Assembly (NCBI RefSeq): GCF_048593235.1
Contig: NC_133617.1
Location: 488,230,958 to 488,294,957, forward strand
DNA length: 64,000 nucleotides
Direction: 5' to 3'
Source: Sminthopsis crassicaudata
Taxonomy: Eukaryota
The notes under the pieces are model-generated. The model saw only the letters and a list, made by a program, of their open reading frames with translations, was not told the DNA's origin and ran no database searches. This document shows positions 18,269-47,895 of the stretch, piece after piece. A program made the position numbers and the translations under genes. The stretch's first letter is position 1. Each line of letters begins with the position of its first letter.

Positions 18269-19348
18269 TCATACATTGGTCACTGGGCTTGATGGCAAGT
18301 TCCCATCTCCTGCTACGGACTCATCAGCACTTAAGCCGTCAGCTTCAGGGAGCTTTACAGCCTCATCCATGTTTTCCACAAGAGGTTCACTCTCGACTTT
18401 GAGGTCACTGGTGGCTACCCCAGCCTCCAGGTCCTCCAGCATCACAGAACCCTGTCTAGACTTTCGCTTGCCAAAGAAGGTGGTGAGTGTGGGCCTACCA
18501 ACAGCCCCCTCACCTTCAGGATTCCTTGTGTCGCCTTCACCTGCTGCTGACCCTGACACAGCCTGCTCATCTACAGCCTGAACTGGTCCAGCCCAAGCAT
18601 CCCCAGCTCCTTTATGTTTCCCATTTCCCACAAGCATCAGAGCCCCCGTCCTCCTCTTCTGCCGCCGACGCCACAACAAGAACAGGACTACCAAGAGAGT
18701 TGCCACCAGAACTACCACCACCAGAATCACCAGCACAGAGTTACTGCCACCCTGTTGCAATTTGTTTGCAATGGTCAATGAGATGGAAGATGTGGAAGTG
18801 GTCTGGGACCCTTGGAAACTTGTGGAAGTAGTCTTAACTGTTGAAATATCCTTGGAGGGGGTTGTTTCTTTAATGACTAGGGTGGTATTCTCTTCCTGCC
18901 CTCCAGTGGCATTAAAGGCAGAGGGTACTGAGGCGGGAGTTGTTGTCAAAGCAACTACAGCCTTGATACTAGTAGACAGAGTAGCCGCATGTGTAGCCAG
19001 TTCCTGGGTGCTATTAAGGTCTTTCTTATCCACTGAGGTCAGCCCAGAACTAAGAGTGGTAGAGGACGCCACCTCAGCAGTAGGAGTGCTATCCCTGGCC
19101 TCTGTCATTGAGGACGTCAAAAGTCTGGCATCCAGGGCTGCAGAGGACATGAGGGTCGGATCTGAATCTGAGGCTGGCAAGGATGTGGCTTCCAGGGGTG
19201 GCTGAGAGGTCAAGAGCTGCAGATCCGAGAAAGAGCTTGACACAGACACTGTATCCACGGCCTGGGAGTCAGTGGTGGCTATTGAGATCCAGAAGCACTC
19301 AGTGAGGATGAGAAGCAACAAGAGAGACAGAGGGGACACTATCGCCAT
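18269..19348 (-). CDS. SPN: Leukosialin / CD43 / sialophorin, 359 aa, single coding exon
   Basis: Signal peptide, S/T-rich mucin ectodomain and TM, then WRRRQKRRTGAL, DAWAGP and RPTLTTFFGKRKSRQGS, matching the conserved CD43 tail. Non-coding exon 1 donor cag|gtaaga at 19802 and acceptor cag| at 19409 give a 394-nt intron. Confidence 0.97.
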   Translation of the reverse strand: MAIVSPLSLLLLLILTECFWISIATTDSQAVDTVSVSSSFSDLQLLTSQPPLEATSLPASDSDPTLMSSAALDARLLTSSMTEARDSTPTAEVASSTTLSSGLTSVDKKDLNSTQELATHAATLSTSIKAVVALTTTPASVPSAFNATGGQEENTTLVIKETTPSKDISTVKTTSTSFQGSQTTSTSSISLTIANKLQQGGSNSVLVILVVVVLVATLLVVLFLLWRRRQKRRTGALMLVGNGKHKGAGDAWAGPVQAVDEQAVSGSAAGEGDTRNPEGEGAVGRPTLTTFFGKRKSRQGSVMLEDLEAGVATSDLKVESEPLVENMDEAVKLPEADGLSADESVAGDGNLPSSPVTNV

Positions 19349-22264: not shown

Positions 22265-23306
22265 ATCAAGCCATTCTCCAATTGATAAATGGTCAAAGGA
22301 TATGAACAATTTTCAGATAATGAAATTGAAACTATTTCCACTCATTATGAAAGTGTTCCAAATCACTATTGATCAGAGAAATGCAAATTAAGACAATTCT
22401 GAGATACCACTACACACATCAGATTGGCTAAGATGACAGGAAAAAATAATGATGAATGTTGGAGGGGCTGTGGGAAAACTGGGACATTGATGCATTGCTG
22501 GTGGAGTTGTGAAAGAATCCAACCATTCTGGAGAGCAATCTGGAATGTCCAAAAAGTTATCAAACTGTGCATACCCTTTGATCCAGTAGTGCCACTACTG
22601 GACTTATATCCAAAGGAAATACTAAAGAAGAGAAAGGGACCTGTATGTGCCAAAATGTTTGTGGCAGCCCTTTTTGTAGTGGCCAGAAACTGGAAACTAC
22701 GTGGATGCCCATCAATTGGACAATGGCTGAACAAATTGTGGTATGTGAATATTGTGGAATATTATTGTTCTGTAAGAAATGACCAGCAGGATGAATACAG
22801 AGAGGCTTGGAAAGACATCAATTGATGCTGAGTGAAATGAGCAGAACTAGATCATTATACACTTCAACAATGATACTGTATGAGGATGTATTCTGATGGA
22901 AGTGGATATCTTCAACATAGAGAAGATCTAATCCAGTTCCAATTGATCAATGATGGACAGAATCAGCTGCACCCAGAGAAGGAACACTGGGAAATAAGTG
23001 TAAACTGTTTGCATTTTTTGTTTTTCTTACCAGGTTATTTTTACCTTCTGAATCCAATTTTTCCTTTGCAATAACAACAACAACAAAAAAATTTGGTTCT
23101 GCACATATATATTGTATCTAGGATATATTATAACATACTTAATATGTATGGGAATGCTTGCCATCTAGGGGAGGGAGTGGAAGGAAGGGGGAAAATTCGG
23201 AACAGAAGGGAGTACAAGGGATACTGTTATAAAAAATTACCTATGAGTATATACCGTCAAAAAATGTTATAATTATAAAATTAATTTTAAAATTAAAAAA
23301 AAAAAA
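22265..23306 (+). mobile_element. 5'-truncated young L1 with 16-bp TSD
   Basis: ORF 22424..22825 is the ORF2 C-terminus; poly(A) at ~23295; TSD gaaaatcactatctta (22249-22264) and gaaaatcacgatctta (23307-23322). Confidence 0.95.
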
Positions 23307-28068: not shown

Positions 28069-30173
28069 TCAGAAGTAAAGACCAAAATCTATACGTTTGG
28101 AGTTGTAGAACTGGCCTTCAGGGGGATCCAACTTCCGACAATAAACACCATCTGGAAAATAGCCTTCATCTGCCCAGGTCTAGGAGAAAGGAAAGACGAG
28201 AGGTAAGTGGGGGTATTTATGGTAATATCTCTAATACAGGAATTAGGGAGAGAGGTAGGTAAGGTCTGGGCAGAGAGAGAATTCTTACCTGCATCTGGGC
28301 ACTGGTGAAGGGCCCATAGAGCTCTGCATCATTTGTGTTTTCCCATTTGTATTCCCACATCACATCAGCCAAGCCATCTCCCAGGGCAGCTGCTTCTAGA
28401 AAGACAACCAGAGAAATCCTTCTCAGGTACATTGCCCAGTTCCCTAAGCCCAAGTACAGTCTACCCGACCTGTTTTCTCCCTACACATAATCTATCCCTG
28501 TCTCCCCTTATAATTCCTATCACACTTCATCCCCCCCATACAAACTCACATCCCATCTATCCTCCACAGGTCCCATATTTTTCCATTTAGCTCTGCCTCT
28601 CACCCCCACACACAAATGGTTCCCACATCCTCTGAGTTTTCAGTCTTCTTCTGATATCTTGTCAGATTCTATAACCTTCCAAGTCTCCATTTCCCTGAAA
28701 GGAATCTACAGTTCCAAGCCTTCAACCCTCACCTCCTCCTTGGGCTGGGGTTGGGGTCTCTAGTTCCCCTTCCCCAACCTCTTCAGCAAACATGTCCAGA
28801 ACTGGACGAGGTGCTGTGTCTGGAAGCCCAGGTGTGGGGCCCCCCAGCGCTTTCAGCCTCACAGCTAGCCGTTCCCTGGTTTCCTGGTACACTCCGTGGT
28901 TACCGCGGGCAACCATCTGGTCAGCCAATCCTGAGAGTCGGTCTAATCGTTGTGGGGAATTTGGCCGCTGGGGTCCATTACCACCCTTCCTGGCACCTAG
29001 CCGCCTCAGGGCCCCAGCAACTGTCTCCCCTGGCAACAACATCTCCAAGAGACCCTCTAAGAGGGCTTGAGGGCCCAGTGGCGTCTGGCCAGGACTGTCT
29101 TCCTCCGAATCTGAGGCAGGGGGCTGGCCTGGAGGGCGCTCCCGGATCTTCACCTAAGATAAGATAGGACAGGTTACTTTTTTAAACCTTTTAGGCTTAT
29201 CCCTTCTAGGATCTAGGTATACTGCTCCATAGCCCCAGTCCCCACTGCAGGCACCCGGTCTCTCTGCTGGATCCATTTCACAAATGAAGCATGTCACTCA
29301 GCCAGGACTCCTGGCTAGGGGCTCTAACCCAGTCTATGTTGTCCAGCCAGCTGTCCCGAATCTGGGCATCCCGGTGCAGAAAGTAGTTGCCATCTGAGTC
29401 AAAGTGGCCCTCTTCCATTTCTTCCTGCAAGTTGAAGGGTGTGATACGCACACCACCCTCACTTGGGAGTGTGGCCGCCTCCTGACCTGGATGAACAGAT
29501 ACCCAGAATTGGGCAAGAAAAAGGGAAGCAACACTTCAATCCAACTTACAATATCATCCTCCAGCCTTCCCACCACATCTTGGCACCAGACTAGGCACGG
29601 ACCAAGACTTAATGTTTGCTGAAAATTCCTCTGGGAAGAATCTACCTTCAACTTTCAAGAATCAAACGGGAGGCTGAGAAGGATGTGAGGAGAAGGGAAT
29701 AGAGCCCTCAGGTCCCATGGCCTCACCTTCCACATCTTCTGAAGCTAGGATGACATACTTGCTAGCACCATCTTCATCCTCATCTTCTTCATCACTGTCC
29801 AAAGAATGTTTGCCTTTAAACCGGCTCCCAGGACCCCCTGCTCCTGTCACAGGATCCACCAGCTACGGGCAGAAAATAGGGCTGGATGCAGTAGACTCAA
29901 ATGCAATGAAGTCCCGTGTAGTTCAGTCCCTCCCAACCACACTTACTGGGGAACTCAGGCATTCTAACCCTCCCCCCTTCTTTTTAGAGAGATCCCCTCT
30001 ATTCCACATCCTGGAAACTCAAGCAGCCTGACCCCCCCCTTCTTTCTGGAGAGATCCTCTCCATTCTGTGTCCTGGAAATTCGGGCATTGTGACCCCTCA
30101 CCTTCTTTTTGGGGAGATCTTCTCCATCCTCTTCAACTCCCACATCCTGGAAGGTTACTCTCCGCTTGGGCAT
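28069..30173 (-). CDS. CD2BP2: CD2 antigen cytoplasmic tail-binding protein 2 (U5-52K, GYF domain), 334 aa
   Basis: Coding exons 30102-30173, 29727-29862, 29329-29486, 28733-29153, 28289-28395, 28069-28179 (1005 nt). All GT-AG and phase-consistent. Motifs [44 protein letters not shown]. Non-coding exon 1 donor at 30881, exon 2 acceptor at 30211, Kozak ccaccATG. Confidence 0.98.
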
Positions 30174-31190: not shown

Positions 31191-32026
31191 CTTGTTTGCC
31201 GCGAAGGGACACAAAAAGAGGAATGGGGCACAAACGGAAAGGCCAGGGAGAAAAGTGTATACCCCATTGCCTTTGCCTAAGCTTGGACCAGAAAGCAAGG
31301 GGATCTCAGGGTTCCGCTCTTCCTTCTGCGAAACCACCAGCCTCTCTCCCTTTCCAGTTTTATTGTGAGGAAAGGAACATTTTTCAACTTTGTCATTTTA
31401 AGGGAAACCTCGTTAATTCTCTAACCACCTCCAGTTTCCCCTGAAAATCTAGAGCCCTCTAGGACCCAGGAGGAAGTCTCTTTTTGTACTTCGGCCTGAC
31501 CTGGGGCGGTCTCCGGGAGGATTTCCTGGTTTCTGGGGTGGGGTGTGAGCCACCAAGAGATAGGGAAACGACTGCCCCGCCCCTGCACCTGTTCCCACTG
31601 TCCCAGCTTGGAGGGGCCCTGCAGCCCCCTGCTCTCAGGTAGGCCCAGACGTCCTAGGCCAGGTCGCACCGGCTTCCTTTGCAGCTGCATCCCATAACGC
31701 TGGAGCCTCAGTTGCCCAGTGCTCCCCGCCGAAGTGCCCTGCCAGGACTCTGTTTTCCGCTGACTACCTTGTTCCTTCAAACCTCAAGCACTGGGGTACC
31801 AAAAACAAGTCAGGACCTTCAGAGTTACTATGACGTTAAAACTAATCTGTCGTGTAATTGGGATATATTTCCATGAAAGCAGGGACAGCCTTCTTCCCCA
31901 GAGTACCCCGGGCAGCACCGCCCACAGCGGGCACTCAAATATGTATCTCTGCTTTGCCCACCCCACGATTCCTCCCTCCCCTCACACCTTCCTTGAACCC
32001 ATGGTCCCTTCTCAGGTTTAGCTACC

Positions 32027-32605
32027 ATGAAACTGCACCGGAAACCTGTGCTCAGCTACCTTCGGGGAACAGGGGACCGGGCGCCAGATCAGGAAGGAAT
32101 TTTGCTGAAGAAGGGGACCCGCAATCCCAGCTACCAACGCCGCTGGTTTATCCTTCGTGGAAATCTCCTCTACTACCTGGAGCACCAAGGGGATCGGAGT
32201 CCCCTAGGCCTCATCTTGTTGGACAACTGCCGGGTGGAGCCCCGAGCCAGTACCAGTGGGCTCTATGCTTTTACCATCCTGGCCTCCGCAGAAGGTGGCC
32301 GGTGCTACAAACTGGCAGCAGAGACCAAGAAGGACTTCGATAATTGGCTTCAAGCCTTGGTTTGGGCAGGATGGAGCCAGCTGTGGGAGCTCCTGCAGCC
32401 CTTACAGGAGCAGTATCAAAGAGTGTGCCAAGAGGCTGGAGTGGAGCCCCGGTCCCCACCTCAGGAAGAGATATTTCTGAGCCTCCCCTGCTCTCCAGCC
32501 CCCTCTGGCTTCCCGGAATTGCACCAACGCTTTGGGGAAGAGATTCAGGCACTTGCCAGGTCCAGGGCCACCAGGAGGCAAGTGGACCTCACAGAATTTG
32601 GGTGA
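32027..32605 (+). CDS. Sesquipedalian/PHETA (FAM109/IPIP27)-family protein: PH domain + short helix + C-terminal F&H motif, 192 aa
   Basis: Intact ORF with Kozak gctaccATG. Acceptor ccttctcag| at 32015 with branch-like ctcac. PH motifs EGILLKKG..YQRRWFILRGNLLYY..LAAE..NWLQAL. The N-terminal MKL and the FPELHQRFGEEI motif resemble PHETA1 (MKLNERS.., FARLHECYGQEI; recalled). AATAAA at 32699 and 32733. Confidence 0.9.
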   Translation: MKLHRKPVLSYLRGTGDRAPDQEGILLKKGTRNPSYQRRWFILRGNLLYYLEHQGDRSPLGLILLDNCRVEPRASTSGLYAFTILASAEGGRCYKLAAETKKDFDNWLQALVWAGWSQLWELLQPLQEQYQRVCQEAGVEPRSPPQEEIFLSLPCSPAPSGFPELHQRFGEEIQALARSRATRRQVDLTEFG

Positions 32606-32732
32606 AGGAGGAACCAGAATCCTGGGTCTGGGAGAGAGGATGATATGGCAGGTCTAGAGCTCTCTTAAGGGACATCTGGGACTGACAATTGGGGACAAAA
32701 TAAAAGGGGTTCATACAGCCTGGAAACACTTC

Positions 32733-32738
32733 AATAAA
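32733..32738 (+). terminator. Poly(A) signal of the PHETA-like gene (second AATAAA at 32699-32704)
   Basis: Two canonical AATAAA 94 and 128 nt after the stop codon. Confidence 0.65.
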
Positions 32739-34069: not shown

Positions 34070-37000
34070 TTAGAAGTAAGCGTCCTGTCGTGCCGAAGCT
34101 GCTGAGTTCCCATCTCCTCCATCTTGTGGGGGTGGAGAACCATCAGCCTTCCGTCGAAGGGACATCTTTCGTCCTTGAGCCTTCTTCTCTTGTTTCTGCC
34201 TCTCCTTTTCCCTTTCCTTTTCTTGTTTCTGTCTCTCCTTCTCCTGTTTCTGTCTCTCCTTCTCCTGCTTCTGAAGCTCCTTCTCCTGCTTCTGCCTCTC
34301 CTTCTCTTGTCGCTTGCTCTCCTTTATCGGACCCAGAGGTGTGCTGTTTCCAGTTGGTGAGGGCAGAGAGGGATGCAGCCCTTCAGCTGTGACCACAGGG
34401 CCTGGGGCAGGGCCAGCACTGGCTCTCCGAAGAGGAGGTGGTGGGGAGGAAGAAGCCCCACCCCTGGAGGCACGACTTTTGAGGCCTGGAAGGCTGAGGA
34501 GGCTAGATGATGGGCCAAGGGGGGGCTGCTGTCGTCTTCGCTCCTCGTGGATTGCCCTTGAGCCATGGAGTCTCCTGGATGGTCGGTACTGCAGCTCCCC
34601 CCGAGTCTCTCTCCACTTCTTTAGCTGAGCTGCATTTTCACGCTCTATCAGGGCTTCTGTCACAGGGAGGTTTGTTACCTAAAAGAAGAAGAGTGGGTCA
34701 TGAGACACAAGTCTCAGGAAGAATAGACTCAGGCAGCTGACTCCAGAAAATAGAGAGAGGCTGGGAAAGACAGAGCAAGAGATGCCCACCTCATGCACAA
34801 GGAATTCTTCCTGCATGCACTGCTGAGGTAAGTTCCTCAGTTGTTCCATGGTCTCATACATTCCCTGGCAGGATCGAAGCTTCTCTACAGAGCCCAGCGT
34901 ATGCCGAAGAAGCACCAGAGCCACCCTGAAGATGATCTTGACTCCTGAGGGAAGATTAGGTGTTGGAGGTCCGGAAAGGATAGAGGAGGCTGGTGAAGAC
35001 CTAGCTGATTCAAAAGCTCTTACTCCTTTTAAAATAGCAAGGCCTAGGAGATACCCTCCCTTTCCCACCTTCACCAAATAATGATGAATTTTGCTTGAGG
35101 ATTTGTGTCCTGGGTCATCAGGAAGATGATGGCTTTGCTAGCAACAGGAATTAGCAATGGAAACCACTGTGCTCTGAAGAGAATTGTTCAACTTAACCCA
35201 AGGACAGTCTGTAGTTCTCTCAGTGGTAGCTGGGCCAAGGGCATCTATTAAGTGATCAGGATTATGAAGGAAGTGGTACCAATATCAGCCAACTAGGGGG
35301 TGGCTAGGTGGCACAGTGGATAGAGCACCAGCTCTGAAGTCAGGAGGACCTGAGTTCAAATCTGGCCTCAGACACTTAATCCTTCCTAGCTGTGTGAGCC
35401 TGGGCAAGTCATTTAACCCCAATTGCCTCAGCAAAAAAAAAAAAAAAAAAATATCAGCCAACTAACAGGAAGAGGAAACTAAGAGAAACCTATTAGATAT
35501 GGAGGTGTACCCACTCTCAAGGTTCACCCTCTCTTTTAGAGCTATGTTGTGATGAGATTAGAAAACTCTTGAAACCACTTTGATAAAAGGAGTCAGTGAT
35601 GACAATGCATGACAGTAAGTATCTGGCTCCTCTGAGAGGGTTTTGCCTTCTGACAGGAGCAGATGAACAGTAATAAAACAGAAGTCCCAAAAAGGAAACT
35701 TGAGTGAGAATTGTAGGGCTAAAAGTGCTACCTTCACAAAAGAACATGTCCCAGACCCGGAGAACTGAGGCCCAAGGCAGAGTACGAGCAAAGATACACA
35801 TGAACCACTCAGTCATGTAAAGTACAGGGTCAATGCGCTGGCGCCGAAGGTGTCGGTGAGCTAGAGGGGAAGCTCTCCGAAGAAGCGCAAAGAAGATCTC
35901 TCCATCCAGCTGGATAGCCTCCTAAATAGTGAGCAGAAACATCAAAGTGAACCTCCCTCTGACTTTCTCTTCCCTCACTTCTCCCTTCCAGCTGGCCTTG
36001 CTTCCATACCCTTTCTAAAGCCAAAGTGTCACTTACCAGCCCAGCACTGTAGTAGCCAGGAAGGTATTTGTCACAAATCTGTACCAAGCACCAAAAGGCT
36101 TGCTGCAAAGGAAAACAGGAATGGATGTGTGAGTAATGAAGAGCACGGTTAAATATCTCCCCATTCCCACTTGACTGAGAGCCCTGTGGTCACTCCCATT
36201 CTTTCCACCCAGGGTTTCTGGAGCGGTCCAGTCAGCTCTCTGAACCAAAGCAAAGTATTGCAGGAGACTGCAGCTCCCCCCATTGTCCAACCCTAGATCC
36301 CTTATCCCTGCTCTCTGACCTCAGCAGGCATATGCATAAGCAGCACAGCTGCCACAGGGGCCTGGGCTTGGCAGTAACCCTCATCAGGCCGATAGATGGT
36401 GTAGGCCTTCAAGATTCGATAGAGGTCTTGCTGCCTGCAGGCATGGGAAAGGGAAGAAAGTTACCATAGTAACTGGGATCCAATGGTTCTGGAGGACATC
36501 TGTTCAGACTGCCCCAAATCTCCTAAGAAATTGCCTACAGCATGTGCCACTCTAGCCCTTCTTCTTAGCTCAAATCTGTGCCACACATCCACAGCTACCA
36601 GATTAAGCTTCTAACATGAAGCTATAATTGTGTCATTCCCACTCATCTACTCAAAAGCCTTCAATGACTTCTTCCCACTGCCCACAAAATAAAAGTCCAA
36701 ATTCCTCTGTCTGGCTCTCAAGCCCCAACCTATCTTCCAGCTTTATATGCTTTCCCCCTCCTTCAGATACTTCACCCAAATTAAACTATGTACAACATAT
36801 CAAAACATCTAGTTTTTTTCTTTGTGTTCTTTGGCTTGCATTGTTCCTACTACAGATAAAAGGAATTTATAAATTTATAAAAGGAACCAATTCCCTACTA
36901 CAGGGAATGCCCTCCCCCTTCTCTACCAATCAAAATTCTGCCTATTTTTTGGTGCTCAACTCAAATGCTCTTCCAAGATTCTTTTTCTTAATTTTCTAGC

Positions 37001-40000
37001 CAGAAGTTCTTCAGCAGTTGGCATCTTTCTTGTGGCACTAAATCACACTCTAATCTTTAATTTGATTGTCGTTCCTCCATACTAGACTATGTACAGAAAT
37101 CAACCAACCAACTATCTTTGCATTCTGCATAACACTGAACAAAAGAGCTCTTGAACTGTATCATAATTTTTGCTGAATGAACTGTCCAAGATCTTTTTTG
37201 ACTGTACACTGTCATCCACCCCTAAATCTTACCCGTGACCCCCTCGAGCAGCAAACATTTCATGAAAGGGAAATTGTCGATGCAAATCCTTCTCAATGAC
37301 ATCCAGCCACTTAGGGTCTCCAGGGGCCCGCTCCAGCTCCTTCAATGAAATGGAGAAGTTATATCTCTATGCAGCAATCCTCCCCCCCCCCCCACATTCA
37401 AGGGAAAGCTCTCTAGATTCTTCTCCCAACCCTGGTTGTAGTAGAGTCTTGACTTGATCAGAACATTTCAAAATAAATATTCTCCTGACAACTAGCTGTC
37501 ATCCATACCTCAAATTTACCAGGGTTCTGATCTAGGAGTTCCTTGCTGTTGGACAGGAACTGCCAGGCTTTGGCTCTAAGAGATGAGGGGATGCCCTTCC
37601 GGCATCGCAGCTTCACCTAGCAGAAAGGAGACATGGGTGGGAAAGATGACATATATGAGAACAGACTTTTATTCAGCCTAGATAAACCCATCATCAGACT
37701 GATCATCCCCTCAGGACTCATCAAAAAATCTAGTTTCCAGCTCTCAGCAGGGCTGGTCCTCAGGTTATCCCAATGTCAGATAAAATAAAAGCATTTGTGC
37801 CTTAGGTTTATATTTTTAAGATATGTCATTTTCATTCCCCCAACACACAGCACAATATATTATCCAATCTACTTGGCTAATCCTATTCCTGTACATAATT
37901 TTCCCTCAAAGATTTCTAGATGTTTTTTACTTTCTCCCACCCTCCTTATTACTGGAAAGGTTTAAGGGCAGAGAAACTGGAAGGAATAGGAAGGCCTGCA
38001 CAGGTGAAGGGTGTATCAAACTTTGACCTTGCTCTCCCCATTTAAAGTACCTTCTGAAATCGACGAGATAACCACTTATCCCAGTTACTGAACATGTCCA
38101 GCCATTTTAGCTCCCGCTGACGGGCCACATCAACAGGAACAGAACTTTCCCTGGAGGAGAAAGGAAAAAGAGTTCAACTGATGTCACACCAACCATAAGT
38201 TTCTCCATCCTTTCTTCAGTAAACCCTCAAACTTCTCCCTTCCAAATCTCCTCAGATTCCACAACTTCCCATTTTTAAACCCTAATCTTTAGGTGTTAAA
38301 CCATTATATCCATGATGACCTAGCCCAGGGGAACGGAGGCATCAGGGGTCATTCCATTATGTGGTAGGAAGGGGAACAAGGATGACCAGGATCCAGATAG
38401 AGGGAAGGAAGGAGTCATAGCAGTCACACCCCACACCTTGGGAGGGAGTGACTCAGGCCATAGGAGGCAAGGGAACTAGGAAAGAGGGCAGGGCCCAGAG
38501 AGAAGAGGAAATGGAGAGGCACTCTTACCCCTTTCTCCTGTGAAAACCTAGAAGTCCCTGCGCCCTCACTCAAAAAAGTTTCATTCAGTGTTCACCTTCT
38601 CCTAAATCACATTCTACCCCTTTATACTTTGAATGACATCCCACTTCAAGGCAGGAAGGAAGTAAAGAACATGGAATTGGCTCCATATACCCTGGCCCCA
38701 CCCTTCAGGTTAAAATCAGGAATCTCTGGTCACCTAAATTACACTAAAGACATTGTGACTTCCTTGCCTAAATAAAAAATAATCTCCATCGAAGCTTGTA
38801 ATCCAACTAAATTTCTAAATACTAGTCTTAACTGGTTATTTAACCCTTGAACCAATAAGAACTGGTTCCCTACCTGTGGCCACATTTTAATATTAGAGAA
38901 TCACAGGCTATCAGAAGTGGAAGAGGCCTTAGAAACCTAGTACAATCTCTCTTTTTACAGATGAGACAAAACCCAAAGACTACTGAATGACTTGTCTAAG
39001 GTCAACACTGCAAGTTAGGAACAGAAATGAAACTAGAATTCAGATGACCCAGTACTCTCTGCTCCACCATGCTCAACCACACAATGATCAATGGTCAATC
39101 TAATTGAATTAAACTTCCTTTTGAAGTTTAATTCAAAATAACCCTTAATACTGCCTAAGACTGAATTCCAAATAGGAGGAACTATGGAAAGGACAGGACT
39201 TATAAATGTCACCCCTTCTGAAGGGCCCTTTCATCCCATGCCAGGAGTGGTCCCATGGGGTCCCCGGTACTCACAGGCTTCCAGAGTACTGGCTGCCCCC
39301 CAGGAATCCATATTTGTCTGTCTTGCGAAAGGCAAGCCCGTTGATTTCCGAGTCTGAGCCCATGGAGCTCACATCATCTGCCAAAGACTCCAAGGTCCCT
39401 GACATGAGGCTCACAGAGTCCAGGTAGCTCAGGCTGTCTGGGGCCTGTCCCCGAGGTCCTTGAATTCCAGGACCCAAGCTAGACATGGAGCCCAGGTCCT
39501 GGGAACCTTCAGCTGGCTCAGGGGCTGGGGTCACAGTTACCATGGCTACTGGAGTCTCACAGACCGCAAGAGACTCCGTTCCTGTCCCCAGCGGCACCTG
39601 GACGTCTGGGCCTGTCGTTGCCACTACTGCAACTGTTTCACCTGTTGCCATCGTCCCTGTAGCAGCTAGCCCATCTGTTGTCAGTCCTGCTGTTACAATA
39701 GTAGCTGGTCCAGCTGGTCCTGAAGCTACCACCATTCCCGGTTTGGGGGCAACAGGCGGTTTGGCTGTCACTGCACCAGAAGTTGCTACAACAGGCACAG
39801 GAGCTGTACCCTTTGCTGGCATGGACACAGATGCTCCGGAGAGGGCCGAGTCAGCGTCCTGGTCCAGTCTCGATGCTGCCATCGCTTCCGCTGGGGTCAC
39901 TCTCACTGAGCCGGGGACGAGGGAGTCACCTCCCAGGGCTGCCTGCGAGTGCGCTGAGCTTGCTGTTGCTGCCTCCGTCCCCACCTCGGGGGTCACAGCA

Positions 40001-40512
40001 CCCACGGGCAAGGCTGTTCCTGCTGCCGCCCCCGTTCCTGAGGCCGCTGGCCTGCCATGAGGGTCAGAGGCTGACCCCGGCCCAGGCTCTGTCCTTGTGG
40101 TTCCAGTGGTGCGAGGGCTGTCTGTCCTCATCTCCTTGGTGGGTGCGGGGTCAGGATCCGGCCCCAAGGCCGAAGCTGCAGCCACAGCTTCCAGAGTCAG
40201 CACCACTACCGTGCTGCCGCCGGTTCCTGTGCCGCCAGCCGGCCCCGGTGACCCTGCAGTAGGGGCTAGAGGAGGCGGCGGCCGGCTCCCGGGGATGTCG
40301 GGCGGGGGCCTGGGGCCGCCAGACACCCAGGCCGGGCGGGCCTCCCCGGGGGCCACCAGAGTGACTGGAGAGGAGGTGGCTGTGGTCACTGGGGGCCCCG
40401 GTGCCACCACCAGCACAGGCCCAGCCCGGGAGCCCCGAGGTGGTGGGGAGGGGGCCACTGAGGCGCCATGGCGGCGTGGGGGGGCCACCAAGGGCGCCGG
40501 GCCTGTCTCCAT
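34070..40512 (-). CDS. TBC1D10B: TBC1 domain family member 10B (EPI64B, Rab-GAP), 895 aa
   Basis: Coding exons 39275-40512, 38051-38150, 37509-37616, 37233-37339, 36320-36434, 36037-36102, 35732-35921, 34790-34944, 34070-34678 (2688 nt), phase-consistent. TBC motifs [10 protein letters not shown] and YCQAQ; (K/E)RQKQEKE repeats; C-terminal DAYF. Confidence 0.98.
35296..35449 (+). mobile_element. Young WSINE1-like SINE in TBC1D10B intron 7 with 15-bp TSD
   Basis: TSD aatatcagccaacta at 35281-35295 and 35450-35464; intact A/B-box-like head and poly(A). Confidence 0.93.
36560..37140 (+). mobile_element. L2 3' relic in TBC1D10B intron 4
   Basis: ctcaaaagccttcaatgacttc..caaaataaaagtccaaattcctc..ctcaagccc L2-like motifs. 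Confidence 0.55.
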
Positions 40513-45100: not shown

Positions 45101-47895
45101 AGAAGAATCCATAGCCCCATAGCCCAGTTAGTGAAATAATAGGATTTAAGGGACTCTAAATAGACCGTCTAGTCTCAATGTCTGTTATTTTCCCCAGGAA
45201 AAATAATTTGCTTGAGGTCATAAAGCTAGTGATAGAGATCCCTGAAGTACAGCTCTGATCCTATTCTCTTCCTCCTCCCAAATCTTCAGAATACAGTCTT
45301 GTATTAGAGCATACTGGAATAGCAGAAACACTCTCACGATACCCTGACAACAAAGATAATTCGGCTAATAACCATGGTCTGAGTTTTCTGAGATAACTGA
45401 GCCTTTCTCCCCATCATCTACCTTGATCTGGTCCTACACCAGCCAAATTCAGAGTCAGTTTTTAGTCAAGAAGAGATAAGTGATCAATCTTTCTGTCCAA
45501 CTAAAGGGAAAGAGTTCTGTCTCTATGAGAAAAGAAATGTTGGAAAGAGAGGGGAATAGAAAGAGAGAGACAGAGAAAAGGGGAGAGNNNNNNNNNNNNN
45601 NNNNNNNNNNNNNNNNNNNNNNNNNNNNNNNNNNNNNNNNNNNNNNNNNNNNNNNNNNNNNNNNNNNNNNNNNNNNNNNNNNNNNNNNNNNNNNNNNNNN
45701 NNNNNNNNNNNNNNNNNNNNNNNNNNNNNNNNNNNNNNNNNNNNNNNNCTCCATGGGAGTGTCTATTTTCCTGCCAGTAGTATGTTCCTTATAGATCTCC
45801 TGGCCCCATCACCACCACCATCATTACTACTACCACTCTATCACTTTGGGGGTGCAATAGAGACCATAAATAATCAAGGGATGAGACAGTCAATCTGCTC
45901 AGATCCCCACATGCTCACTCCTGCACTGAGGACTTTAGCCTGTCTTCCCTTCCCTTCTACTCTATGGTGACTGATTCTCCAGTGATTTTTCACTAAGCCT
46001 TGCTAGCCTGAAGGTCTTGGGCATCTGACCTTTTTGTCTTCCCATCTCCTCTCCCTTAGGCACCCAAGAAGGCCAAGAGAAGGGCAGCAGAGGGTGGCAG
46101 CTCCAATGTCTTCTCCATGTTTGACCAAACACAAATCCAGGAGTTTAAGGAGGTAAGGAGCAGGGGGGTGGGCACTGAGAGTAAGGGGCATGAGGGGAGG
46201 TGATAAGAGAATAAGGAATCCTGGTGGCAGGCTACTTTCATGAAGCCAGGTGTCCTAGGTCCCCAGCTGTCAATCAACATGATTTCCTCCAACTCTGAGT
46301 TCTTCTCCCCCCCTTTCCTTCCCCCCACTCCCTGGAATGTGCACCTGTCCCAGAGTAGGGATGGAGATGAAGGAAAGGAGAGATGGAGAATTCCTTGGTT
46401 CCTGGGGGCCGATCTAGCAGGGGGACAGCTGGGCTGAGGTGGGGGGAGGAATGGAACAGAGAATGAAGTGGGGACCCTGCTGAGTCCTAGGAATGAAAAT
46501 AAATGGTAGAACCCCCCAGACTCTCTCTTTTCCTGTCCTGCAACAATCTCCTCCCTTCCTAGGCCTTCACCGTCATTGACCAAAACCGAGATGGCATCAT
46601 TGACAAGGAAGACCTAAGGGATACCTTTGCAGCCATGGGTAAGAATGCCTCTGTCCCTTGGCCCTTGAGTCCTGATCATATAAACACAAAAAACCCAAGC
46701 CTCTTAGCCTTCTCTATCTTAGTCTTTGGTAGCCACTGTTGTCTTCAGACTTGACTTAGCCCCTCTGTCTCAGCTTCTCATAGAGTCCAAGTTATTAATT
46801 AAATTAAATAATTATTAAAGTTGGAAGGAACATTATCACAGAATCCAGTCTCCCCAATTTCCGGAGGAGAAAACAAAGGCACAGAAAGGTGATTTGCCCA
46901 ACATTATACAACCTTTTGCTGGCAATGGTGGGACCCATCCCTGCCTGGGTCATTGCATTCATTCCTGGCCCTTCCCAGAATCCTATTGCCTAGCTTATTT
47001 GTCCTACCAGCTTCCTCCCTACACACCCTATTAACCAGCCTTTCCCAGTAGCACAATTTGAAAACCATCCTCTTCCCCATCTCCCCCATAGGCCGACTGA
47101 ATGTGAAGAATGAGGAACTGGATGCCATGATGAAGGAGGCCAGTGGACCCATCAACTTCACTGTCTTTTTGACCATGTTTGGAGAGAAATTAAAAGGTGG
47201 GTTTAATGGTCTTAGGTATATATATTACCCCTCTTACCTTACTCTCTTTGGGGCTCCAGGACTCTCCCCCAAGAAATACACCCTTCTCCCCAAAACATGG
47301 AAACTTAGCTTCCAGCTTTCCCTGCCTCCAGGTGCTGATCCAGAGGATGTGATCACTGGAGCCTTCAAAGTCCTGGACCCTGAGGGGAAGGGATCCATCA
47401 AGAAGCAGTTGTGAGTAGAGGCTTATTGGTCTGTTCACAGGCAGCTCTCTCCCTATCTCTAAGGTCCCATGCTCTCCCTTCATATCCTGCTCCATGTTTC
47501 TAGGCCCAGATCTTCCCATCTGTAACTTTTTTTTTTTATTTTTGGGGTAAGGAGATAGCCACTATTCTCCAAAATAAACTGATTTATTCCCAATAACTCG
47601 TCTTTTCTCTCCAGTCTGGAAGAGCTGCTCACCACCCAGTGTGACCGATTTTCTCAGGAGGAGGTAAGTTTTTTGGAAGAAGAAAATTGAGGAAAAGAAA
47701 AAGGGAAAGCCTTTCCATTTAAGGGAGGAGAGAGGGAAGAAGGAGGTTCCTGTGGAAGATGGCTTCCTCAATCACTTGTCTCTATTCCAGATCAAGAACA
47801 TGTGGGCAGCCTTCCCCCCAGATGTAGGCGGCAATGTGGACTACAAGAACATCTGCTATGTCATCACTCATGGAGATGCCAAGGACCAGGAGTAG
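44185..47895 (+). CDS. MYL11: Myosin regulatory light chain, fast skeletal (MYLPF), 169 aa
   Basis: Coding exons 44185-44187 (ATG only), 46060-46152, 46563-46638, 47092-47196, 47332-47410, 47615-47663, 47791-47895 (510 nt). [22 protein letters not shown]; EF-hand [12 protein letters not shown]; ends HGDAKDQE. Confidence 0.98.
45053..45098 (+). repeat. (CA)n microsatellite
   Basis: About 23 uninterrupted CA units in MYL11 intron 1. Confidence 0.95.
45588..45748. other. Assembly gap (161 N) after a GA-rich tract
   Basis: Run of N in MYL11 intron 1. Confidence 1.

What the first reader, a model, noticed from the sequence alone, without database searches (positions are those of the whole stretch)
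32016..32738. Intact, apparently unnamed third sesquipedalian/PHETA (IPIP27) paralogue between CD2BP2 and TBC1D10B
Seen in sequence: a 192-codon uninterrupted ORF with a strong Kozak, a splice acceptor 11 nt upstream, a candidate non-coding exon-1 donor (cag|gtaggc at 31639, 377-nt intron) and two AATAAA signals. The protein has a full PH fold (aa ~21-113), an amphipathic helix (aa ~115-136) and a terminal F-x-x-L-H-x-x-(F/Y)-G-x-E-I motif (FPELHQRFGEEI, nt 32510-32545). Established: PHETA1/2 (Ses1/2, IPIP27A/B) have exactly this PH-coiled-coil-F&H layout. They bind the ASH-RhoGAP domain of the 5-phosphatases OCRL (Lowe syndrome) and INPP5B through the F&H motif. Humans have only two members, on chr12 and chr22. 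As I recall, the human locus here has no coding gene, only a divergent lncRNA (CD2BP2-DT). Inference: this is a functional third OCRL/INPP5B adaptor kept in marsupials and lost or decayed in human.
Basis: partly seen in the sequence, partly recalled or inferred. Interest (0 to 1): 0.92.

Follow-up and report, generated by a model that had tools for sequence, protein, structure and literature searches.

The report
Third, overlooked PHETA/sesquipedalian adaptor gene
This marsupial window carries an intact gene under purifying selection for a third member of the PHETA/sesquipedalian family of adaptors for the Lowe-syndrome phosphatase OCRL; the gene is as old as jawed vertebrates, is broken in apes and monkeys, and was not found as a protein in mouse or human, so it has no name or literature.

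Summary

- **Protein:** a PH domain (Pfam E=1e-16), a following helix and a complete F&H motif. The F and H are invariant in 36 orthologues from shark to marsupial.
- **Family:** its best full-length structural matches are Sesquipedalian-1 and -2.
- **Phylogeny:** it is not a recent copy. It falls in a strongly supported clade (100/98) containing sharks, coelacanth, lungfish, ray-finned fish, amphibians, lizards, turtles, monotremes, marsupials and many placentals. This clade is separate from the PHETA1-type clade (AU p=0.012).
- **Synteny:** the CD2BP2 / gene / TBC1D10B order holds in marsupials, platypus and a jackal. A frog keeps the TBC1D10B-like neighbour, and a teleost orthologue sits next to mylpf.
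- **Selection:** marsupial dN/dS is 0.15-0.23.
- **Losses:** the bonobo and colobine gene models are frameshifted relics. No mouse, rat or human protein was found.

NCBI already labels the gene "sesquipedalian-1-like", but no paper I could search describes it. Three points are inferred, not shown:
1. OCRL/INPP5B binding.
2. A conserved clathrin-box-like C-terminus.
3. Orthology with zebrafish "pheta2".

Verdict: a real gene, a new member of a known kind.

The parts
31425..31638 (+). Non-coding exon 1. The 5' end is not determined; the conserved block starts at about 31425 or earlier. The donor is cag|gtaggc.
   Evidence: This block is conserved with two other marsupial loci far better than the intron is, and the donor is kept. 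Koala isoform P0003 reads through this exact junction. The frame has stops in the window.
31639..32015 (+). Intron, 377 nt, GT...AG.
   Evidence: The acceptor tract and AG are conserved in L001 and L002.
32016..32026 (+). 5'UTR part of exon 2 (GTTTAGCTACC) before the ATG.
   Evidence: Identical or near-identical in L001 and L002.
32027..32605 (+). Coding sequence, 192 codons plus TGA, in a single coding exon.
   Evidence: Orthologues share 88/83/76% identity in other marsupials. dN/dS is 0.15-0.23, with bootstrap upper bounds of 0.40 or less.
32090..32365 (+). PH domain (aa 22-113).
   Evidence: Pfam PF00169 E=1.2e-16. AF2 pLDDT is 83-95. PDB sequence matches to cytohesin/GRP1 PH domains reach E about 1e-11.
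32375..32437 (+). Helix after the PH domain (aa 117-137), the candidate dimerisation or coiled-coil segment.
   Evidence: AF2 helix 117-137. L122 is invariant and L126 and Y130 nearly so. This segment has the lowest dN/dS, 0.13. IPIP27A/B have a predicted coiled-coil region and form homo- and heterodimers (PMC3046058).
32507..32545 (+). F&H motif 13-mer GFPELHQRFGEEI (aa 161-173): F at position 2, H at 6, F at 9, G at 10, E-I at 12-13.
   Evidence: The criteria come from PMC6743453 (F2 and H6 are absolutely required, bulky hydrophobic residue at 9) and PMC3046058 (F, H and EI mutants lose OCRL1 binding). It sits in predicted helix 162-182.
32585..32602 (+). Extreme C-terminal motif DLTEFG (aa 187-192), the local version of the clade-wide [DN]-L-[IM]-[DE]-[LF]-[GSE] ending. 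It resembles a clathrin box.
   Evidence: Alignment A2. 109 of 118 teleost orthologues carry the motif in their last 8 residues, and 74 end in NLIDFG. LIDFG is the documented clathrin box of Ack (PMC3038647). None of the PHETA1-type sequences fetched shows this ending; some of those models are truncated or aberrant at the C-terminus.
32699..32738 (+). Two AATAAA poly(A) signals (32699-32704 and 32733-32738), 94 and 128 nt after the stop codon.
28072..30173 (-). Upstream neighbour, the CD2BP2 orthologue (GYF-domain gene), head-to-head with the PH gene. Its start codon lies about 1.85 kb from the PH gene's ATG.
   Evidence: tblastn of the koala-like locus GYF gene pieces gives up to 94% identity. 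Pfam GYF is recorded on the orthologous product.
34072..40512 (-). Downstream neighbour, the TBC1D10B orthologue (RabGAP-TBC), tail-to-tail.
   Evidence: RabGAP-TBC is recorded on the orthologous products.
46016..47889 (+). MYLPF orthologue (fast skeletal myosin regulatory light chain) exons.
   Evidence: They match, at up to 82% aa identity per exon, the EF-hand gene lying 3 kb downstream of the teleost orthologue in L008.

Best explanation
This is an expressed protein-coding gene under purifying selection for a third member of the sesquipedalian/PHETA (IPIP27) family. It belongs to an old vertebrate paralogue lineage, distinct from the PHETA1-type genes, located in the CD2BP2-TBC1D10B-MYLPF neighbourhood.

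The 192-aa product is a minimal Ses-type adaptor with four parts:
1. An N-terminal PH domain.
2. A conserved helix, probably for homo- or heterodimerisation as in IPIP27A/B.
3. A short disordered linker without the PACSIN2-binding PPPxPPRR motif.
4. A helical F&H motif that most likely docks on the ASH-RhoGAP-like module of the 5-phosphatases OCRL and INPP5B.

The conserved extreme C-terminus (LIDFG/LIDLG in fishes, DLMEFG/DLTEFG in marsupials) may add direct clathrin binding.

**Shown here:** the gene structure, family membership, separate clade, synteny, purifying selection, motif conservation, and decay in catarrhine primates.

**Inferred:** OCRL/INPP5B binding, dimerisation, clathrin binding and transcription in this species.
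For: - **ORF and signals:**
- **PH domain:**
- **Family:** the top six full-length Foldseek matches in Swiss-Prot are Sesquipedalian-1 (human, mouse, rat) and Sesquipedalian-2 (cow, mouse, human), E = 2e-12 to 7e-11.
- **Tree:** a careful IQ-TREE of 62 proteins gives a 38-member clade containing the window protein, supported 100/98. It is separate from the PHETA1-type clade (100/99), with the outgroup set (unnamed representatives, presumed invertebrate) outside both. Forcing the mammalian genes to join the PHETA1-type clade costs 26.9 lnL, p-AU 0.012.
- **Clade members named by their sources:** sharks, coelacanth, lungfish, bichir, paddlefish, gar, teleosts, caecilian, newt, frogs, Anolis, turtles, monotremes, marsupials and placentals.
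- **Synteny:** the GYF gene (-) / PH gene (+) / RabGAP-TBC gene (-) order holds in three marsupials, platypus and jackal. A frog keeps the TBC neighbour, and a teleost has a mylpf neighbour.
- **Selection:** pairwise dN/dS among four marsupials is 0.15-0.23, and 0 of 1000 bootstraps reach 1.
- **Motif:** F162, L165 and H166 are invariant and G170 nearly so across 36 orthologues. All positions that PMC6743453 and PMC3046058 report as needed for OCRL binding are present (F2, H6, hydrophobic 9, E12-I13).
- **Splice junction:** it is reproduced by koala model P0003.
Against: - No binding, expression or localisation data exist for this protein in any species that I could find.
- The window species has a proline at motif position 3 (FPELH), where all other mammals have Q. 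It also has T instead of M in the C-terminal motif. Either change could weaken the proposed contacts.
- The F&H helix is modelled with only moderate confidence (pLDDT 62-69).
- Bona fide mammalian PHETA2 was not in the tree, so 'separate from PHETA2' rests on three indirect points: the deep age of the clade, synteny, and published similarity values (PMC7272357).
- Repeated loss in primates, a bat, baleen whales and a mole-rat shows the function is dispensable or redundant in many lineages.
Confidence: 0.8

Rival explanations
1. It is a real, selected PH-domain protein, but the F&H-like helix no longer serves OCRL/INPP5B, or never did in this lineage. The protein would then work through another partner, for example clathrin via its C-terminus, a phosphoinositide via its PH domain, or heterodimers with PHETA1/2.
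For: - It has no PACSIN2 motif and a much shorter linker than PHETA1/2.
- The clade has its own conserved C-terminal motif, not seen in the PHETA1-type proteins fetched.
- The PH domain keeps the cytohesin-like K28, R32 and R39 basic signature.
- The window species has proline at motif position 3.
Against: F, L and H are invariant, and G and E-I are kept, over roughly 450 Myr of divergence. That is hard to explain unless the same OCRL-type pocket is the target. The same motif positions are the ones required experimentally for OCRL binding (PMC6743453, PMC3046058).
Confidence: 0.14
2. It is a recent lineage-specific duplicate or retrocopy of PHETA1 or PHETA2 that happens to lie between CD2BP2 and TBC1D10B.
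For: It has a single coding exon, and NCBI names it 'sesquipedalian-1-like'.
Against: - Orthologues sit at the same syntenic position in monotremes and placentals, and in part in a frog.
- The clade reaches sharks.
- The AU test rejects union with the PHETA1-type clade.
- There is an upstream intron with a conserved junction.
Confidence: 0.02
3. It is a non-functional relic in this species: an open frame kept by chance, or transcribed only as a divergent non-coding RNA of the CD2BP2 promoter, as in human.
For: The equivalent human locus is described as a lncRNA, CD2BP2-DT, with weak coding potential (PMC12005790). Primate models are frameshifted. No expression data exist for this species.
Against: - The 192-193 codon frames are intact in all four marsupials and both monotremes.
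- dN/dS is 0.15-0.23, with no bootstrap replicate reaching 1.
- The lowest dN/dS values fall in the PH domain and the helix.
Confidence: 0.04

Closest known systems
PHETA1 / Sesquipedalian-1 / IPIP27A / FAM109A (human chr12q24, next to CUX2-SH2B3-ATXN2)
   Same: Both have the N-terminal MKL... helix, a PH domain, a following helix and a C-terminal helical F&H motif with F, L, H, aromatic, G and E-I at the same positions (PFARLHECYGQEI in a primate Ses1 versus GFPELHQRFGEEI here). It is the best full-length structural match. Both lie near a myosin regulatory light-chain gene and in ATXN2/SH2B-type paralogous regions (MYL2-CUX2-PHETA1-SH2B3-ATXN2 in PMC12898128; MYLPF in this window).
   Different: It belongs to a different clade. 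Identity is only about 26-30%. The window protein is shorter (192 versus 249 aa), lacks the proline-rich linker and the PPPxPPRR PACSIN2 site, and has an extra conserved C-terminal clathrin-box-like motif.
PHETA2 / Sesquipedalian-2 / IPIP27B / FAM109B (human chr22q13, next to NAGA-SMDT1-NDUFA6)
   Same: It has the same architecture and also lacks the PACSIN2 motif (PMC7272357). Foldseek matches it over the full length.
   Different: Identity is 24-25% and the chromosomal neighbourhood differs. A direct tree test was not possible because no mammalian PHETA2 sequence could be fetched.
Zebrafish 'pheta2' (zgc:153733, chr3:32.82 Mb; Ates et al. 2020, PMC7272357)
   Same: It is probably the orthologue of this gene. 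The paper reports only two PHETA genes in zebrafish, no synteny of pheta2 with human PHETA1 or PHETA2, and greater divergence from both. Here, teleost sequences split into a PHETA1-type clade and this clade. The teleost members of this clade lie directly upstream of mylpf, and several NCBI models even fuse the two genes. The double mutant with pheta1 has renal endocytosis, cilia and craniofacial defects.
   Different: The zebrafish sequence itself could not be fetched, so orthology is inferred by elimination and synteny. Fish proteins are longer (about 270 aa) and carry a conserved SPKLWPK linker motif that tetrapods lost.
APPL1 and Frabin/FGD4 (other F&H-motif partners of OCRL)
   Same: They use the same kind of short helical F&H peptide to bind OCRL/INPP5B (PMC6743453).
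   Different: Their domain architectures are unrelated (BAR-PH-PTB; DH-PH-FYVE-PH), and they are not homologous outside the motif.
Ack (TNK2) clathrin box LIDFG
   Same: Fish orthologues end in ...NLIDFG or ...DLIDLG. LIDFG is a documented non-conventional clathrin box that binds the clathrin heavy-chain terminal domain (PMC3038647).
   Different: The marsupial version is L-[MT]-E-F-G, and placentals have replaced the tail altogether. The resemblance is a five-residue match and has not been tested.

Membership tests
Sesquipedalian / PHETA (IPIP27) family | N-terminal PH domain preceded by the conserved MK[LI]... N-terminal segment | tested here: met
   Pfam PH covers aa 22-113, E=1.2e-16. The AF2 PH core has pLDDT 83-95 and an N-terminal helix at 5-13. 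M1, K2 and L3 are conserved across the clade and are shared with the PHETA1-type and outgroup family members.
Sesquipedalian / PHETA (IPIP27) family | Helical or coiled-coil segment directly after the PH domain that mediates homo- and heterodimerisation | tested here: inconclusive
   A helix at 117-137 is predicted, with conserved L122, L126 and Y130 and the lowest dN/dS. Dimerisation itself cannot be tested here.
Sesquipedalian / PHETA (IPIP27) family | C-terminal 13-residue F&H motif: F at position 2, H at 6, bulky hydrophobic residue at 9, E-I at 12-13 | tested here: met
   GFPELHQRFGEEI is at aa 161-173. F, L and H are invariant in 36 orthologues. The criteria come from PMC6743453 and PMC3046058.
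Sesquipedalian / PHETA (IPIP27) family | Nearest relatives by whole-protein comparison are Ses1/Ses2 | tested here: met
   Foldseek ranks 1-6 in Swiss-Prot are Ses1/Ses2 over query residues 1-186. In the phmmer representative search, family-type proteins make up most of the single-domain hits of 160-460 aa.
Sesquipedalian / PHETA (IPIP27) family | Direct binding to the ASH-RhoGAP-like module of OCRL and INPP5B | not testable with these tools
Orthologue or recent copy of PHETA1 (or of the PHETA1/2-type clade) | Groups inside that clade and shares its chromosomal neighbourhood (CUX2-SH2B3-ATXN2, or NAGA-SMDT1-NDUFA6 for PHETA2) | tested here: not met
   It forms a separate clade, 100/98 against 100/99. 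The AU test gives p=0.012 against union. Its neighbours are CD2BP2, TBC1D10B and MYLPF. Mammalian PHETA2 itself was not in the tree.
PHETA1-type PACSIN2 adaptors | PPPxPPRR motif in the linker (PMC7272357, PMC4694765) | tested here: not met
   The linker aa 138-160 is EPRSPPQEEIFLSLPCSPAPS, with no PPPxPPRR. PHETA1-type sequences fetched here do carry PPxPPRRR.
Clathrin-box proteins (L-hydrophobic-x-hydrophobic-[DE], or the Ack-type LIDFG) | A motif fitting the consensus in a disordered, accessible region | tested here: inconclusive
   Fish, coelacanth, shark and turtle orthologues end in LIDFG, LIDLG, LIDLS or LIDLE. The window has LTEFG in a disordered tail (pLDDT below 50). T at the second position departs from the consensus, and binding has not been tested.

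The most novel reading that the evidence does not exclude
Jawed vertebrates ancestrally had a third PHETA paralogue ('PHETA3'), probably dating from the early vertebrate genome duplications, in the CD2BP2-TBC1D10B-MYLPF region. It couples an OCRL/INPP5B-binding F&H helix to its own C-terminal clathrin box.

If so:
1. It was lost independently in catarrhine primates, probably in muroid rodents, and in some bats, baleen whales and possibly archosaurs. That would explain why the OCRL field never met it.
2. The human relic survives as the lncRNA CD2BP2-DT.
3. The zebrafish gene studied as 'pheta2' is really this gene. The published pheta1/2 double mutant would then remove PHETA1 and PHETA3 rather than modelling human PHETA1 and PHETA2.
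Probability: 0.5. Interest if true: 0.68.

Novelty: new member of a known kind. Interest (0 to 1): 0.55.

Why it matters
[quoted passage not shown] The field works with two Ses/IPIP27 proteins, the only ones in Swiss-Prot for human and mouse.

A third, older family member has four consequences:
1. It changes the family's evolutionary picture. There are three ancient vertebrate lineages, not two.
2. The zebrafish model may be mis-assigned. The gene called 'pheta2' has no synteny with human PHETA2 and probably belongs to this clade.
3. It gives an evolutionary origin for the human cancer-associated lncRNA CD2BP2-DT, as a likely unitary pseudogene.
4. It offers a natural minimal adaptor (PH, helix, F&H, possible clathrin box, no PACSIN2 site) for dissecting what each module contributes.

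Species that keep it, such as dog, ruminants, squirrels, marsupials and Xenopus, could differ from mouse and human in OCRL-pathway redundancy.

Tried and rejected
- **Earlier findings:** the look-up near this place returned nothing.
- **Pfam scans of neighbouring single ORFs:** uninformative. I identified the neighbours instead by tblastn with pieces of the annotated orthologous loci.
- **Zebrafish Pheta2:** the sequence could not be obtained. The teleost search lists only the best 120 hits and zebrafish was not among them. The paper's supplement holds no sequence. No paper links pheta2 and mylpfa.
- **Mammalian PHETA2:** it could not be obtained.
- **Loci with no useful context:** the Latimeria and Polyodon loci are not on record. 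The gar, catshark and bichir loci show no recognisable neighbour within 10 kb.
- **Literature:** Swan et al. 2010 (PMC2840420) is not held, so I took the motif criteria from PMC6743453 and PMC3046058. Searches for PHETA3, sesquipedalian-3 and sesquipedalian-1-like found no paper.
- **Hypotheses rejected:** a recent retrocopy (tree, AU test, synteny, intron), and a chance ORF or pseudogene in this species (dN/dS, intact frames in six non-placental mammals).
- **Not done:** I did not look at any human sequence, and I left the N run at 45588-45748 untouched.
Full report
**1. The observation**

The window holds an uninterrupted ORF at 32027-32605 on the + strand, 192 codons from ATG to TGA.
- Exon 2 begins at 32016, after ...cccttctcag, 11 nt before the ATG.
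- A donor, gctctcag|gtaggc, has its GT at 31639.
- The intron is therefore 377 nt.
- AATAAA occurs at 32699-32704 and 32733-32738.
- The start context is ACCATGA: the -3 purine is present, but +4 is not G.

A tblastn of the protein against the window finds no second copy.

**2. What the protein is**

Pfam places a PH domain at aa 22-113 (E=1.2e-16, 61.6 bits against a cut-off of 25.1). The closest solved sequences are the cytohesin/GRP1 PH domains (E about 1e-11).

An AlphaFold2 model built on 36 orthologues has mean pLDDT 77 and shows:
- an N-terminal helix at 5-13;
- a seven-strand PH core with its C-terminal helix at 101-114 (pLDDT 83-95);
- a second helix at 117-137;
- a disordered linker;
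- a helix at 162-182;
- a disordered tail.

Against Swiss-Prot models, the six best matches are Sesquipedalian-1 (human, mouse, rat) and Sesquipedalian-2 (cow, mouse, human). Each is aligned over residues 1 to about 186, with E = 2e-12 to 7e-11 and 24-30% identity. Against the PDB, only PH domains match.

The 13-mer at aa 161-173, GFPELHQRFGEEI, has F at position 2, H at 6, F at 9, G at 10 and E-I at 12-13. These are the requirements found by peptide arrays and mutagenesis. F2 and H6 are absolutely required and position 9 is a bulky hydrophobic residue (PMC6743453). F, H and EI mutants lose OCRL1 binding (PMC3046058). A primate Ses1 fetched here reads PFARLHECYGQEI at the same positions.

**3. 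It is an old gene, not a marsupial oddity and not a recent copy**

A search of about 5.8 billion proteins returns full-length orthologues that their sources call 'sesquipedalian-1-like':

| Group | Species and identity to the window protein |
|---|---|
| Marsupials | koala 88%, Gracilinanus 83%, Macrotis 76% |
| Monotremes | platypus 62%, echidna 60% |
| Placentals (53-62%) | shrew, moles, hyaena, dogs, seals, lion, hippo, ruminants, squirrel, marmot, beaver, kangaroo rat, tree shrew, armadillo |
| Amphibians | a frog, 40% |

An exhaustive phmmer search plus cluster look-ups adds turtles, Anolis, Sceloporus, Xenopus, a caecilian, a newt, lungfish, coelacanth, bichir, paddlefish and sturgeons, gar, many teleosts and three sharks.

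A careful maximum-likelihood tree of 62 proteins puts all 38 of these in one clade (100/98). This clade is separate from a PHETA1-type clade (100/99) containing bear, fox, mandrill, lizard, turtle, crocodile, goose, frog, pike and toothfish. Lamprey and hagfish sit beside the new clade, and the outgroup set (unnamed representatives, presumed invertebrate) lies outside both. Forcing the mammalian genes to join the PHETA1-type clade costs 26.9 log-likelihood units (p-AU 0.012).

**4. Synteny**

In the window the gene lies head-to-head with the CD2BP2 orthologue (coding 28072-30173, -) and tail-to-tail with the TBC1D10B orthologue (34072-40512, -). MYLPF exons follow at 46016-47889 (+).

The same order, GYF gene (-) / PH gene (+) / RabGAP-TBC gene (-), is annotated in three other marsupial loci, platypus and golden jackal. 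The frog Pelobates has the TBC gene downstream.

In the striped bass, the clade member lies 3 kb upstream of an EF-hand gene whose exons match the window's MYLPF at up to 82%. Several NCBI fish models even fuse the two genes under the name 'myosin light chain, phosphorylatable, fast skeletal muscle b'.

PHETA1 on human 12q24 sits in the run MYL2-CUX2-PHETA1-SH2B3-ATXN2 (PMC12898128). From general knowledge, MYLPF, SH2B1 and ATXN2L lie on 16p11.2. That arrangement is what paralogues from the early vertebrate genome duplications would look like.

**5. Selection and gene structure**

Nei-Gojobori dN/dS between the four marsupial sequences is 0.15-0.23. The bootstrap 95% upper bounds are 0.40 or less, and none of 1000 replicates reaches 1. 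Against platypus and jackal the ratio is 0.18-0.43. By segment:

| Segment | dN/dS |
|---|---|
| Helix 115-140 | 0.13 |
| N-terminus and PH domain | 0.19 |
| F&H helix and tail | 0.29 |
| Linker | 0.35 |

Across 36 orthologues, F162, L165 and H166 are invariant and G170 is nearly so.

Exon 1 is conserved between the window and two other marsupial loci much better than the intron is, and donor and acceptor are kept. A koala isoform model (P0003, 288 aa) reads ...PLLSG|LATMKLHRK, which is exactly the 31638|32016 junction. In the window that upstream frame has stops. Exon 1 is therefore 5'UTR here, and the conserved MKLHRK is the start.

The interval to CD2BP2 is GC-rich with moderate CpG content (observed/expected up to 0.61), which fits a shared bidirectional promoter.

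**6. Losses**

In primates only broken models exist:
- The bonobo 'uncharacterized protein' begins with 21 residues that match the third reading frame of codons about 38-59 of the intact jackal gene, then rejoins the true frame.
- The colobine models run in frame to about codon 90 and end in a tail matching the second reading frame of codons about 97-114.

These are different lesions, so the inactivations were independent or followed an earlier relaxation of constraint. The ring-tailed lemur, a pipistrelle, two baleen whales and a mole-rat also give truncated or scrambled models.

No protein from human, macaque, mouse, rat, horse, pig, elephant, bird or crocodilian appeared. This is an absence in a word-seeded search of predicted proteins, not proof of loss.

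At the equivalent human position, the literature describes a 1215-nt lncRNA with weak coding potential, CD2BP2-DT (chr16:30,355,922-30,357,108; PMC12005790). It is very probably the transcribed relic. I did not examine human sequence.

**7. Features peculiar to this clade**

- **C-terminus.** The extreme C-terminus is conserved...NLIDFG or DLIDFG in teleosts, with the motif in the last 8 residues of 109 of 118 proteins. Coelacanth, shark and turtle have DLIDLG, LIDLS or LIDLE. Monotremes have LLDFG and marsupials DLMEFG, with DLTEFG in the window. LIDFG is the documented clathrin box of Ack (PMC3038647), and IPIP27A/B are enriched in clathrin-coated vesicles (PMC3046058). Placentals have replaced this tail. 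The PHETA1-type proteins fetched here do not show it.
- **Linker.** Fishes and sharks carry a conserved SPKLWPK motif in a long linker that tetrapods lost. There is no PPPxPPRR PACSIN2 site.
- **Window-specific changes.** There are two changes in otherwise fixed positions: Q163P inside the F&H motif and M189T in the tail.

**8. Mechanism proposed**

The protein is a minimal Ses-type adaptor:
1. The PH domain and N-terminal helix place it on endosomal or coated membranes.
2. Helix 117-137 dimerises it, possibly with PHETA1/2.
3. The F&H helix recruits OCRL or INPP5B through their ASH-RhoGAP-like module.
4. The C-terminal motif may tie the complex to clathrin.

Only the sequence and structure features are shown here. 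Every interaction is inferred.

**9. Relation to zebrafish work**

Ates et al. found only two PHETA genes in zebrafish. They noted that 'pheta2' (zgc:153733, chr3:32.82 Mb) has no synteny with human PHETA1 or PHETA2 and is more divergent from both than pheta1 is (PMC7272357).

In my tree, teleost proteins fall either in the PHETA1-type clade or in this clade, and the latter are mylpf-linked. By elimination, zebrafish pheta2 should be the orthologue of the gene in this window, not of human PHETA2. I could not fetch the zebrafish sequence to confirm this.

One caveat: inside the clade, sharks group with tetrapods, while coelacanth and lungfish group with ray-finned fishes. Hidden paralogy within the clade is therefore not excluded.

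**10. Novelty and verdict**

The gene is already predicted by annotation pipelines as 'sesquipedalian-1-like'. Searches of about 8.4 million papers and preprints for PHETA3, sesquipedalian-3 or sesquipedalian-1-like found nothing, and the OCRL literature speaks of two Ses/IPIP27 proteins.

I file it as a new member of a known kind. It is a real, ancient, selected third PHETA-family gene, overlooked because the main mammalian models lack it. Interest is moderate to good: 0.55.

Noticed in passing
window 18269-19348 (-): A single-exon 359-aa ORF with a long Ser/Thr-rich ectodomain, one transmembrane segment and a basic cytoplasmic tail. It looks like a mucin-type membrane protein (CD43/sialophorin-like by eye). 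Pfam gave no significant family.
   Followed up: no
window 22366-22825 (both strands): Overlapping ORF fragments of 122-133 aa that look like a decayed LINE-type retrotransposon ORF. This was judged by eye only.
   Followed up: no
window 45588-45748: A 161-base run of N just upstream of the first MYLPF-like exon match (46016).
   Followed up: no
L008:10001-17612 and proteins P0246, P0255, P0307, P0311, P0315, P0321: In several teleosts, NCBI names the PH-domain protein 'myosin light chain, phosphorylatable, fast skeletal muscle b' or 'myosin regulatory light chain 2'. One model carries both PH and EF-hand domains. These are gene models merged with the adjacent mylpf gene, which incidentally documents the tight linkage.
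   Followed up: partly
tree (proteins P0051, P0081, P0056, P0113, P0340 and others): Inside the new clade the topology is not the species tree. Sharks group with tetrapods, and coelacanth plus lungfish group with ray-finned fishes. The cause could be a rate artefact or an older hidden duplication within the clade.
   Followed up: no
L003:9400-10014 (Macrotis lagotis): The bilby locus has no sequence alignable to the intron or acceptor of the other marsupials. Its ATG is preceded directly by GCCGCC in a very GC-rich stretch, so the 5' structure of the gene may differ there.
   Followed up: no
window 32513-32515 and 32591-32593: There are two window-specific substitutions in otherwise fixed motif positions: Q163P (FPELH against FQELH in every other mammal) and M189T (DLTEFG against DLMEFG in the other marsupials).
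   Followed up: partly
P0207 (hagfish isoform) and P0333 (turtle): A hagfish family member ends in ...GDLLHF, reminiscent of the clade's C-terminal motif, which hints that the motif predates jawed vertebrates. Separately, a turtle orthologue is mis-named 'sperm-associated antigen 8' in its source.
   Followed up: no
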